Positions 56,511 through 59,500 are shown, numbered from the stretch's first letter. The stretch: DNA of 64,000 nucleotides from Takakia lepidozioides (GCA_030704615.1 CM060732.1:77500001-77564000); one strand, 5' to 3'. The notes: generated from the sequence alone by a model not told the origin. A program made the numbers and translations.

Positions 56511-59500
56511 TTACACTGAATCTACTCTATCCAATCTTGGATTCAAATTTACAAGTGTCTCAATCTCTGGCCTCCTCCCCCCTTCCGTGACAAGAGGCTC
56601 TTTTGCTTTCTTGGGGCCACGTGAACGTGGTCCTGCCTTCCCAACCACCCCACTAACTGAGGCTGGCCGTCTGCCACCACCCCTCCCTTTCTCCCGTGGA
56701 CCCGAGCTTGAACCTCGTGCCTTTCCTGGTACGCGAGTAGCACTCGGCGGACCAGAACCTGCTAAGGCATTTGATGAACCCACCACACTCATTCCTAATA
56801 CGCTAACATGGTCTCCATTGACCCCTAATAGTTCATCTGTTGGCTGTTCAAAAACTGGGATGGGCCTAACAGCATACCCTGTGGTCATCTGCTCTATTGA
56901 CAGGCTTCCCTCGCTAAGACCAGCAGTGGAGGCTGGGGAAGGCATATTGCTCTCACTCTGACCAGCACCAGTCTTCTTCCGACGCCCACCTCTTGAGTTT
57001 GGAACACTAGTGTCCAGAGGAGGTCGTGGCTCCTTGGGTAGCCTGCGTTCCCTAGGTTGCTTGGGTGGCTTTGGTTCCTTTGGAGGTTTCGGTTCCTTGG
57101 CTGCCTTTTGCATTTTCGGAGGTTTAGGTGGTTTCCCATCTCCAGTGCTTCGCCTCTGCAGTACACAAAAACACAACATCCTTGAGATAACATCACACAA
57201 TATGTTTGTCATTCCTGTGCGCTGGTCTTACTAACAGCCACATGCCACATCTAGTCCAACCAGTGACAATACACTGGTAATATCAGAAAGAACATGAGGC
57301 TTTCTGGTGTAAACATGAATGCAAAGCCTTGTTAGTTGACCCATAATCCCCTTTTGCCAGATTGTTGTTGGCAGTGTTGGGCACTACAGCAGCTTTGGGA
57401 TGGGATTCATACTCTTGGAAAGTAGCGGGATATGATAGACAACTTTCACAGGGCGTGGTCAATGAGTGTATCTTGATCTCCCTCACTCCCAAAACAGACA
57501 CCAACAGCCGAAGGATTAACAAGGCACCAACAATACCAACCTTCTTGCCATGTCCTGGCCCTGCAGTCAAACTTCCATTCTCTGCAAAACTTCCAGAAGG
57601 CCCCTTCTCTACACTCAAGCTAGCTTCTCCATTTTCAGGTGCTTTGGCATTGGAGGGAGTCAGCTTCTCGTCGTCAAGGGAAGCACCACCACCCTCAGCA
57701 TCAAGACGGACTCCCTTCAAACTGCCTCCCACAGCCCATCCTTTCCTTCGCCTTCCCTGCTTGTCCTGCGGTTTCATTTACAGACAGGATGATTACAAAA
57801 GCTTCATTACAACGAAGTCCGATGAACTACAGAACCTGTGACTCCATTGCAGCAAATATTGCTGAATTCATATTAAAACCGTTGCTATGGCTTATCTATC
57901 CATTGGTAAAGCAGTAGTCTTACAGCAATTAAGAAGAAGTTCCTTAGATAGCACACAAAACCTTTCCTGCAGAAAAGGTTTCCATCACTCAGTCTCAATC
58001 AGATCTTACATCTACTACTACAGATGCAAGATCTGATGTCCTGTTCTTCATTTCAATGAAAGGCGAGGCACCACAATCCAAAAAATCAGTAGTATTACAT
58101 AAAGGGTCCTTCGTAAGGAAAAAGCTAAGTTCTCTGTGTATGTGTAAGAGAAGGTTGCTTTCTGATGAGAATACCCCGGACATTGTATCAGCAAATGGAT
58201 TTTGTCTTCAGGCCACCGGGCATTGACAATCTTCCTTTCCTCCCTGCATCTGGTTTTTGTTCAAAAGTAGACTCCCCGACCTATGATAAATTTCAGTCTA
58301 GTGCCGAGGATAGGGAAGCCCTTCAGATCATCCTTCAGGTCCTCACCCATGTCACAAATTCAGGGAAGTTTTATTTCATTGTGTTCGGACTTCCTTCGTG
58401 CTTCTGACATGGCCTTCAACACTTCAGCCTTCAAGTCAGCGTCATCCAGTAGGGTGAGTTCTTCCTGCCTAATACAGGTACTTTAACAGGACGGTCTTGC
58501 TTCCAAGAAATAGAGTCAATCACCTTAGGGTATCTAGTGTTAGGCATATAATGGATCCCAACATCTGACATTGAACTTATCACGAAGGGCGGTACACCAA
58601 ACTTGCCCCCAAACAGCCACATTAGCTGTTCTAGGGCATGCTGAGATGCTCTATTTGAGCACCAAAAGCTGAATGGATCCTAAAGTTTTGGCATGGTTGG
58701 AGTTGCCATCCCACACAACAGATGCATACAAGGTAGGCCTAACAACGTTGCAAAGCATGGTCCTTTTAACTTCAGTCGAAAAGTCGAGTTAGACCCAAAT
58801 CTTTGCGTTTAGCTGTTTGAACCACCTTTTGTACATGTGCATCCCAGTTACAACTGCTGGAAAACTCAACACCAAGGTTTGTGTAGGAGCAAATGGATGT
58901 CTTCACTGCCCCATGTCCATTTGAGATCCCCTCCTCCCACAATCATTGAAAAGAGAGAGAATGCACTCATAAGATTTTGTTTGCCGTAGCCTTGTGGCCA
59001 TAGACCCTGCACCCACTTAGGACGGAAACATAGGGAATTGGCACCACCTTTGTGAGGGGCTCACTCCAGTAGTGTGACTTACCTTGATATAAACAATTAG
59101 TTCGAAGGTTTCCAGATATCCTCTAGAAAGCCCTTCATACAAGCATCAATCTGCGTTGTGTGAGCAGCCCAAAAGATAAACCCCCAACAGGGCCAGGGCT
59201 TTAAAAACATGGTCTTGGATGCATCGCTGAAGGCCACTCCACCCGTGAAAGAGAACCTGTGGGTGCAGCACCAGGACTTCCCGGGAGGTCACCCATCCCA
59301 GTACTATTCCGGTAAAAAGGCGCTTAACTTCAGAGTTCTGATGGGATCAGGTGTAGTAGCCTTGGTATGACGGCACCACTGAAGAGAGAGAGAAAAAAAA
59401 ATGAAAGAAAGAAGCTTTATGACACCCATGGGGCCCAGGGGAGAGGGACCCTGGGAGAGAGAGAGGCACACCGTTTGCTTGGAAACCTGTTCTTTCATCT

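What the first reader, a model, noticed from the sequence alone, without database searches (positions are those of the whole stretch)
58947..59394. 5S rRNA head + LINE tail + TSD: a SINE3-like element in a land plant, with its partner LINE in the same window
Seen: on the minus strand a complete 5S rRNA sequence has no oligo-T terminator directly after it. It runs through a ~58-bp unique spacer into ~240 bp clearly homologous to the 3' end of LINE family A (copies at 2592, 5543, 20465), ending at the same terminus ATGAGT(A/G)CA. The unit is flanked by a 15-bp direct repeat with one mismatch. Known: this is the architecture of SINE3 (5S-derived SINEs that borrow a LINE tail, described in fish and other animals). 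Plant SINEs are classically tRNA-derived, and the well-known 5S-carrying plant element, Cassandra, is an LTR element. Inference: a plant 5S-SINE/LINE pair that may be undescribed. Caveat: this copy has T5 runs on the sense strand (59314-59318, 59203-59207) that would stop Pol III. It is either decayed or a one-off template-switch chimera like mammalian U6/L1.
Basis: partly seen in the sequence, partly recalled or inferred. Interest (0 to 1): 0.9.

Follow-up and report, generated by a model that had tools for sequence, protein, structure and literature searches.

The report
5S rRNA fused to LINE tail
A complete copy of 5S ribosomal RNA joined to the last ~300 bases of a jumping gene (LINE) was pasted into a plant gene's intron in one event; it has the layout of a 5S-derived SINE, a kind not yet described in plants, but I could not test whether it ever multiplied.

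Summary
A full-length 5S rRNA sequence lies on the minus strand (59379-59260; Rfam 87 bits). It has no T-run terminator directly after it. It runs through 57 nt into 241 nt that are 77-81% identical to three LINE 3' ends in the window, and it ends at the same terminus. The whole unit sits inside a 15-bp direct repeat (14/15) that is unique in the window and starts with the TTCTCT-type motif seen at the other LINE insertions. So one LINE-mediated event inserted a 5S+LINE-tail RNA.

- The "partner LINE" is present only as 5'-truncated fragments.
- The "unique spacer" is probably diverged LINE coding sequence.
- This copy carries two T5 runs and one T4 run, one of them inherited from the LINE tail. 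Pol III would stop at them.
- Copy number, the test that separates a SINE from a one-off chimera, could not be run.

At least ten unverified first-reader notes report 5S+LINE-tail units elsewhere in this genome, at 156-408 letters. That spread fits recurrent independent chimeras better than a single family.

My odds are: one-off template-switch chimera 0.5, SINE3-type family member 0.3. Either would be new for plants.

The parts
59380..59394 (-). Target-site duplication, 5' copy (TTCTCTCTCTCTTCA), directly upstream of the 5S 5' end
59260..59379 (-). Full-length 5S rRNA-derived head. The box A and box C regions match the consensus. About 7 helix pairs are non-canonical. There is an internal T5 run at 59318-59314
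59203..59259 (-). It is open in the LINE reading frame and weakly resembles the LINE peptide just after the CCHC motif. It ends in a T5 run
58962..59202 (-). LINE 3' tail, 77-81% identical to the LINE A copies, ending in ATGAGTGCA. Two blocks are 91% conserved and flank a middle stretch at 68%
58947..58961 (-). Target-site duplication, 3' copy (TTCTCTCTCTTTTCA)
2588..2966 (+). LINE A copy 1: a 5'-truncated 379-bp 3' end with a 19-bp perfect TSD (TCTATGACATTATTTGCAA)
5540..6467 (-). LINE A copy 2: a 5'-truncated fragment of about 0.93 kb with the post-RT region (ORF 5887-6450) and a CCHC motif. It is 98% identical to copy 1 over 379 bp
20466..20657 (+). LINE A copy 3: a 192-bp 3' end with a 16-bp perfect TSD (TTCTCTAGAAAACGGG)
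58146..58942 (-). Older, decayed LINE fragment (LINE B) lying directly 3' of the element. It is collinear with LINE A copy 2 at 72-73% identity and includes a CCHC motif. The 5S unit inserted at its 5' edge
59487..60005 (-). Exon of the host SNF2/INO80-like helicase gene (Helicase_C domain). The element lies in the intron downstream, in the sense orientation

Best explanation
This is a chimeric retrocopy made by a LINE in one target-primed reverse-transcription event.

Proposed mechanism:
1. The LINE endonuclease nicked a TTCTCT-type target in an intron of an SNF2/INO80-like gene.
2. Reverse transcription started on the 3' end of a LINE transcript and copied about 300 nt of it.
3. The enzyme then moved to the 3' end of a 5S rRNA molecule, by template switch or on a pre-joined RNA, and copied it to its first base.
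4. Integration produced a 15-bp target-site duplication.

The product has the layout of a 5S-derived SINE (SINE3). Most likely it is a one-off, non-propagating chimera of the U6/L1 or 5S/L1 kind, a 'proto-SINE', rather than a copy of an established Pol III-driven family.

Shown: the parts, the single TSD, the shared terminus and the LINE nature of the tail.
Inferred: the template switch, the LINE origin of the 57-nt junction segment, and the lack of propagation.
For: Evidence for a single event:
- The 14/15 TSD abuts exactly the first base of the 5S and the LINE terminus. It is unique in the window.
- The TSD length (15 bp) and its first bases (TTCTCT) match the other LINE insertions here: 16 bp TTCTCTAGAAAACGGG and 19 bp TCTATGAC....
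- The 5S is complete, covering model positions 1-120.

Evidence for a chimera rather than a SINE:
- The LINE-derived part is long, about 300 nt.
- It stays open in the LINE frame for about 55 codons from the junction.
- In that frame alone, its first part resembles the LINE B peptide after the CCHC motif (p=0.006; the other frames are not significant). This is expected if a coding LINE transcript was the template.
- The T-run at 59174-59171 is homologous to a T5 run in the LINE A tail. Any Pol III transcript carrying this much tail would meet a stop signal before the 3' recognition end.
- Two further T5 runs are present in this copy.
- Tail divergence from LINE A is concentrated where the LINE family itself varies: 91/68/91% by block, against 93/81/100% for A1 vs A3. 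So the tail comes from a distinct functional lineage, and decay since insertion is modest, in line with the 14/15 TSD.
- LINE tails are frequent, at least 5 in 64 kb, so there was ample machinery.
- Leads only, unverified: ten other first-reader notes of 5S+LINE-tail units in this genome span 156-408 letters. That is the spread expected of independent junctions.

Mammalian precedent: 5S/L1 chimeras make up 10.5% of 253 catalogued chimeric insertions, and U6/L1 chimeras each have a unique junction and do not propagate (PMC11838501).
Against: - The decisive measure, whether the 5S/LINE junction is single-copy in the genome, was not obtained.
- The many notes of similar units elsewhere in the genome could equally reflect one or more real SINE families.
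- The 57-nt junction segment shows no significant DNA similarity to LINE A (p=0.4). Its protein-level resemblance to LINE B is weak and is one of six tests.
- The 5S internal promoter region is well kept.
- The T-runs in this copy may be partly later mutations. The T5 inside the 5S cannot have been in a functional 5S RNA.
- In mammals, 5S/L1 chimeras usually carry truncated, antisense 5S (PMC11838501). Here the 5S is full-length and sense.
Confidence: 0.5

Rival explanations
1. It is a decayed copy of a genuine 5S rRNA-derived SINE family (SINE3 type). In this reading the family is transcribed by Pol III from the internal 5S promoter and is mobilised by a stringent-type LINE that recognises the shared 3' tail. 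It would be the first such family in plants.
For: - The architecture is complete: head, LINE tail and TSD.
- The tail blocks kept at 91% are the ones the LINE family itself conserves, and one hairpin pair shows a compensatory change. This fits selection for recognition by the LINE protein.
- The junction segment has no clear DNA match to the LINE copies at hand, as expected for a SINE-specific body.
- At least ten first-reader notes report 5S-headed units with LINE tails on other pieces of the same genome. These are unverified leads.
Against: - There is only one copy in 64 kb, and no copy-number evidence.
- Two T5 runs and one T4 run lie on the sense strand, one of them inherited from the LINE.
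- The noted units differ widely in length (156-408 letters, against 448 here), so this one is an outlier and they are not one uniform family.
- The LINE frame is still open across the junction segment.
Confidence: 0.3
2. There were two independent events. In this reading a solitary 5S gene or pseudogene was already at the site, and a 5'-truncated LINE later inserted next to it with its own short TSD. The 57 nt would then be 5S flank.
For: TTCTCTTTCA occurs just after the 5S (about 59249-59240) and loosely resembles the 3' TSD copy. The region is rich in C and T.
Against: - That internal match is only 6-7 nt without a gap, whereas this LINE makes TSDs of 15-19 bp.
- It leaves unexplained a 14/15 repeat that starts exactly at 5S position +1.
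- No T-run terminator follows the 5S, and no TATA-like upstream region precedes it.
- The same TTCTCTT string also occurs in the LINE B coding sequence at the homologous place.
Confidence: 0.07
3. It is a read-through retrocopy. In this reading a 5S gene elsewhere lost its terminator, Pol III ran into a LINE fragment lying downstream, and that single transcript was retroposed once or a few times. This would be a source-locus origin rather than a template switch.
For: The 5' end lies exactly at 5S position +1, and no terminator follows the 5S. In this reading the 57 nt could be genomic sequence between the source 5S and the LINE fragment, which would explain the lack of DNA similarity to LINE A.
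Against: The T-run in the tail that is inherited from the LINE would stop Pol III. The junction segment is open in the LINE frame and resembles the LINE B peptide. No source locus is known.
Confidence: 0.08

Closest known systems
SINE3 / 5S rRNA-derived SINEs. Examples are zebrafish SINE3, AmnSINE1, OS-SINE1, the fruit-bat MEG families, lepidopteran HaSE3 and coelacanth CoeSINE5 (PMC10946416, PMC5786205, PMC3272025)
   Same: A 5S-derived head carrying the internal Pol III promoter region, a 3' tail taken from a co-resident LINE, and a TSD.
   Different: - Those families are defined by many copies of near-identical structure. Here a single copy is seen and copy number is untested.
- This copy has internal Pol III stop signals.
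- Its LINE-derived part is unusually long (about 300 nt) and still reads like LINE coding sequence.
- All described families are from animals (and possibly fungi), none from plants.
Small-RNA/LINE-1 chimeric insertions of mammals (U6/L1, 5S/L1, U3/L1; PMC11838501, PMC4476161, PMC6789731), and the MINE and tripartite chimeras of Magnaporthe (PMC2104539)
   Same: A small RNA sits 5' of a variably 5'-truncated LINE 3' end, in one insertion with one TSD at the LINE endonuclease motif. As with U6, the small RNA is full-length and in the sense orientation.
   Different: - The host is a plant.
- The LINE has no poly(A) and ends in a specific sequence (ATGAGTRCA).
- Mammalian 5S/L1 chimeras mostly carry truncated, antisense 5S.
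Cassandra (plant TRIM with 5S sequence in its LTRs) and Ajax (PMC10886601, PMC7215508)
   Same: A 5S promoter-bearing sequence inside a plant retroelement.
   Different: No LTR pair, PBS or PPT is present. There is only one 5S in the window. The 3' part is a LINE tail and the TSD is LINE-like (15 bp).

Membership tests
SINE3 (5S-derived SINE) | 5S rRNA-derived head with the internal Pol III promoter (box A, IE, box C) | tested here: met
   Rfam 5S at 87 bits, full length. The box A and box C stretches match the consensus. However, a T5 run lies at element positions 62-66.
SINE3 (5S-derived SINE) | 3' tail shared with a partner LINE | tested here: met
   241 nt at 77-81% identity to three LINE 3' ends, with the same terminus. 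The LINE nature of the tail is shown.
SINE3 (5S-derived SINE) | Many dispersed copies with the same structure and junction but different TSDs | not testable with these tools
   - There is one copy in the window.
- The protein collections and metagenome scans were blank.
- The only other information is unverified notes.
SINE3 (5S-derived SINE) | The unit can be transcribed end to end by Pol III (no internal T-run terminators) | tested here: not met
   For this copy: T5 at 59318-59314, T5 at 59207-59203 and T4 at 59174-59171. The last is homologous to a T5 run in the LINE tail. This says nothing about a possible family consensus.
Small-RNA/LINE chimeric retrocopy (U6/L1 type) | Complete small RNA at the 5' end, in sense, joined to a 5'-truncated LINE 3' end that reaches the LINE terminus | tested here: met
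   Continuity of the LINE part through the 57-nt segment is only weakly supported.
Small-RNA/LINE chimeric retrocopy (U6/L1 type) | One TSD around the whole unit, at the LINE's target motif | tested here: met
Small-RNA/LINE chimeric retrocopy (U6/L1 type) | Junction unique to the locus (not propagated) | not testable with these tools
   The same limits apply as for the SINE copy-number test.
Cassandra-type TRIM | Two LTRs, each carrying the 5S sequence, with a PBS and PPT between them | tested here: not met
   There is a single 5S in the window, and the self-comparison shows no direct repeat around it.
Functional 5S rRNA gene | T-run terminator directly downstream, tandem array context, intact helices | tested here: not met
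   No T-run occurs within 53 nt downstream, the copy is solitary, about 7 pairs are non-canonical, and there is an internal T5 run.

The most novel reading that the evidence does not exclude
The unit is a member of a real, amplified 5S rRNA-derived SINE family (or several) in a land plant, paired with a poly(A)-less, sequence-specific (stringent-type) LINE. This would be the first SINE3 in plants. It would also be a living example of the SINE ancestor postulated for Cassandra.
Probability: 0.3. Interest if true: 0.7.

Novelty: new member of a known kind. Interest (0 to 1): 0.5.

Why it matters
A 2024 review of rDNA and transposable elements says plants have no known 5S-derived SINEs (PMC10946416). 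Cassandra's 5S-bearing LTRs have been speculated to descend from a SINE3 insertion (PMC10886601), but no such element has been reported in plants.

This locus shows that a plant LINE can join 5S rRNA to its own tail and insert the product. That is the step from which SINE3 families are thought to arise (PMC5786205).

If the many similar units noted in this genome share junctions, it is the first plant SINE3. If they do not, it is, as far as I could find, the first recurrent small-RNA/LINE chimera class reported in a plant. That would show that template switching by a poly(A)-independent plant LINE is common.

For the host gene the insertion is intronic and probably neutral.

Tried and rejected
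- **Protein search with the 48-aa ORF across the 5S/junction.** There were no candidates. This is uninformative.
- **Protein search with the 123-aa LINE C-terminal ORF.** There were no hits. This suggests the genome's raw ORFs are not in that collection.
- **Metagenome scan for the junction architecture and for the conserved tail block.** Both returned nothing. This suggests the collection holds no DNA of this LINE family.
- **Representative search.** The nearest relatives are only 44% identical. An ENA contig carrying one of them had no DNA available.
- **Ka/Ks of the tail against the LINE copies.** Omega was 0.4-1.6 in all frames, including between LINE copies, so the last 180 nt show no usable coding signal. 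I dropped this approach.
- **DNA-level test of the spacer against LINE A and LINE B upstream sequence.** The result was not significant.
- **MFE fold of the head on its own.** The z-score was -0.8, which is not informative.
- **Search for a third TSD copy that would mark LINE B's own duplication.** None was found.
- **Relaxed Rfam scan for other small-RNA fragments next to LINE tails.** None was found.
- I re-ran it from coordinates only.

Full report
**What is there**

On the minus strand the sequence reads as follows:
- a 15-bp repeat, TTCTCTCTCTCTTCA (59394-59380);
- a complete 5S rRNA sequence (59379-59260; Rfam 87.1 bits, model positions 1-120 of 120, E 3e-17);
- 57 nt with no obvious relative (59259-59203);
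- 241 nt ending in ...CTTATGAGTGCA (59202-58962);
- the repeat again, with one mismatch (58961-58947).

This is the only 5S match in the window, even at relaxed thresholds. No T-run follows the 5S for 53 nt. Nothing resembling a TATA-like upstream region precedes it.

**The tail is a LINE 3' end**

The 241 nt match three other places at 76.5-80.6% identity. All four share the terminus ATGAGT(A/G)CA.
- Copy 20466-20657 is flanked by a perfect 16-bp duplication, TTCTCTAGAAAACGGG.
- Copy 2588-2966 is flanked by a perfect 19-bp duplication, with 4 nt of microhomology at its truncated 5' end.
- Copy 5540-5915 is 98% identical to 2588-2966 and continues upstream to about 6467.

In the third copy an ORF (5887-6450) matches the region just after RVT_1 in proteins that also carry the Exo_endo_phos endonuclease domain, at up to 44% identity. 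It is followed by a C-X2-C-X7-H-X4-C-like motif.

So "family A" is the 3' end of an APE-type LINE without poly(A). Its copies are 5'-truncated, and it inserts at W-TCT-M-T-like sites with TSDs of 15-19 bp. No full-length LINE is in the window. Two further short, diverged tails lie at about 34515-34595 and 26830-26874. LINE tails are therefore frequent, at least five in 64 kb.

**One event or two**

The 15-bp repeat touches the first base of the 5S on one side and the LINE terminus on the other.
- Only about 1 in 100,000 position pairs in the window match this well.
- No other site in the window comes within 1 mismatch of the repeat.
- Its length and first bases fit the other insertions of this LINE.

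An internal TTCTCTTTCA just after the 5S could be read as the TSD of a separate LINE insertion. It matches only 6-7 nt without a gap, and this reading would leave the outer repeat as coincidence. I rate the two-event reading at about 0.07.

**Context**

The unit lies in sense orientation in an intron of an SNF2/INO80-like helicase gene. Exons with Helicase_C lie at 59487-60005 and 60291-60695. It sits directly at the 5' edge of an older, decayed LINE fragment (58942-58146), which is collinear with the 5540-6467 copy at 72-73% identity.

A PPR-E-E+-DYW editing-factor gene at 44644-47388 supports a land-plant origin.

**The "spacer"**

At DNA level the 57 nt are not significantly similar to LINE A or LINE B upstream sequence (p=0.4 and 0.2). 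Other evidence points to a LINE origin:
- The reading frame that gives the well-conserved LINE peptide further down stays open from the 5S junction for about 55 codons.
- In that frame only, the segment resembles the LINE B peptide that follows the CCHC motif (p=0.006; the other five frame-target tests are not significant).

I therefore read the spacer as diverged LINE coding sequence. The unit would then be 5S plus about 300 nt of LINE 3' end. This is suggestive, not proven.

**Age and source of the tail**

Identity to LINE A is uneven: 91% in two blocks and 68% between them (the blocks were chosen after looking). The same blocks are the ones conserved between LINE copies (93/81/100%). One hairpin pair changed on both sides.

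The divergence therefore mostly reflects a different functional lineage, not decay at this site. Decay since insertion is at most about 9%. This is in line with the 14/15 TSD and with about 7 broken pairs in the 5S helices.

**SINE or chimera**

Both readings predict this architecture. What separates them is whether the same junction occurs many times (the criterion as stated in PMC5786205). I could not measure that:
- two protein searches and two metagenome scans were blank;
- the closest LINE relatives in the representative library are only 44% identical.

The indirect evidence leans toward a one-off chimera:
- The LINE part is long and still frame-open.
- The T-run at 59174-59171 corresponds to a T5 run in the LINE tail itself. 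A Pol III transcript with this much tail would tend to stop before the 3' recognition end.
- This copy has two more T5 runs.

Earlier first-reader notes report at least ten other 5S+LINE-tail units on other pieces of this genome, at 156, 167, 196, 207, 208, 219, 226, 245, 345 and 408 letters. None had been followed up in what I was shown. I treat them as leads. The wide spread of sizes, with this unit the longest, is what independent junctions would give. A cluster near 200 letters could still be a true family to which this unit does not belong.

**Comparison with what is known**

*Mechanism.* The unit matches the small-RNA/LINE chimeras of mammals and the chimeras of Magnaporthe. In U6/L1 chimeras the small RNA is full-length, in sense and 5' of the L1, each junction is unique and the products do not propagate. 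5S/L1 chimeras make up 10.5% of 253 catalogued cases, though their 5S is usually truncated and antisense (PMC11838501). The Magnaporthe chimeras are described in PMC2104539.

*Architecture.* The layout matches SINE3 families, which are known from fish, reptiles, mammals and insects (PMC10946416, PMC5786205, PMC3272025).

*Excluded.* It is not Cassandra, because there are no LTRs. It is not a functional 5S gene.

I found no plant 5S-derived SINE and no plant 5S/LINE chimera in the paper library. A 2024 review states that none is known in plants (PMC10946416).

**Verdict**

- A single LINE-mediated insertion of a 5S+LINE-tail RNA is well supported.
- One-off chimera: 0.5. SINE3-type family member: 0.3. 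Read-through from a source locus: 0.08. Two events: 0.07.
- Either main reading would be a first for plants but belongs to a known kind of element. The genome-wide junction census is simple and decisive.

Noticed in passing
window 34977-35129 and 35199-35349 (tRNA-like matches at 35005-35076 and 35225-35296, minus strand): Two direct repeats of 153 bp, 98% identical, each carry a full tRNA-like sequence (Rfam 56 bits). This looks like the LTR pair of a miniature LTR element with a tRNA-type Pol III promoter (Helenus-like, PMC10886601). Another reader has already noted it (s1-480439).
   Followed up: partly
window 44644-47388 (+): An intronless 914-aa PPR-E-E+-DYW editing-factor ORF. Its PPR region is built from diverged tandem repeats of about 303 bp at 73-76% identity.
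   Followed up: partly
window 6500-6744, 9968-10212, 17262-17348, 23660-23989, 27755-27841, 34157-34366, 8932-9144, 21448-21988, 23314-23837: A short dispersed repeat family of about 80-550 bp, with copies 70-96% identical in both orientations and many copies in 64 kb. It may be a SINE or a MITE and was not classified.
   Followed up: no
window 2588-2966, 5540-5923, 20466-20657: In the LINE A copies an ORF stays open to a TGA inside the terminal ATGAGTACA, so the element has essentially no 3' UTR and no poly(A). Ka/Ks gives no coding signal for the last 180 nt.
   Followed up: partly
window 34515-34595 (-) and 26830-26874 (-): Two further short, diverged LINE 3' ends with the conserved ATGGCCAC(A/G)AGGCTAC block. 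They probably belong to other subfamilies.
   Followed up: partly
window 49786-50446 and 52971-53622: An inverted repeat of about 670 bp at 88% identity with about 2.5 kb between the arms. It was not examined.
   Followed up: no
window 59304-60005 (-): A mechanical ORF runs from the helicase exon through the intron start into the 5S head. A prokaryote-style gene caller would merge exon and retrocopy here.
   Followed up: no
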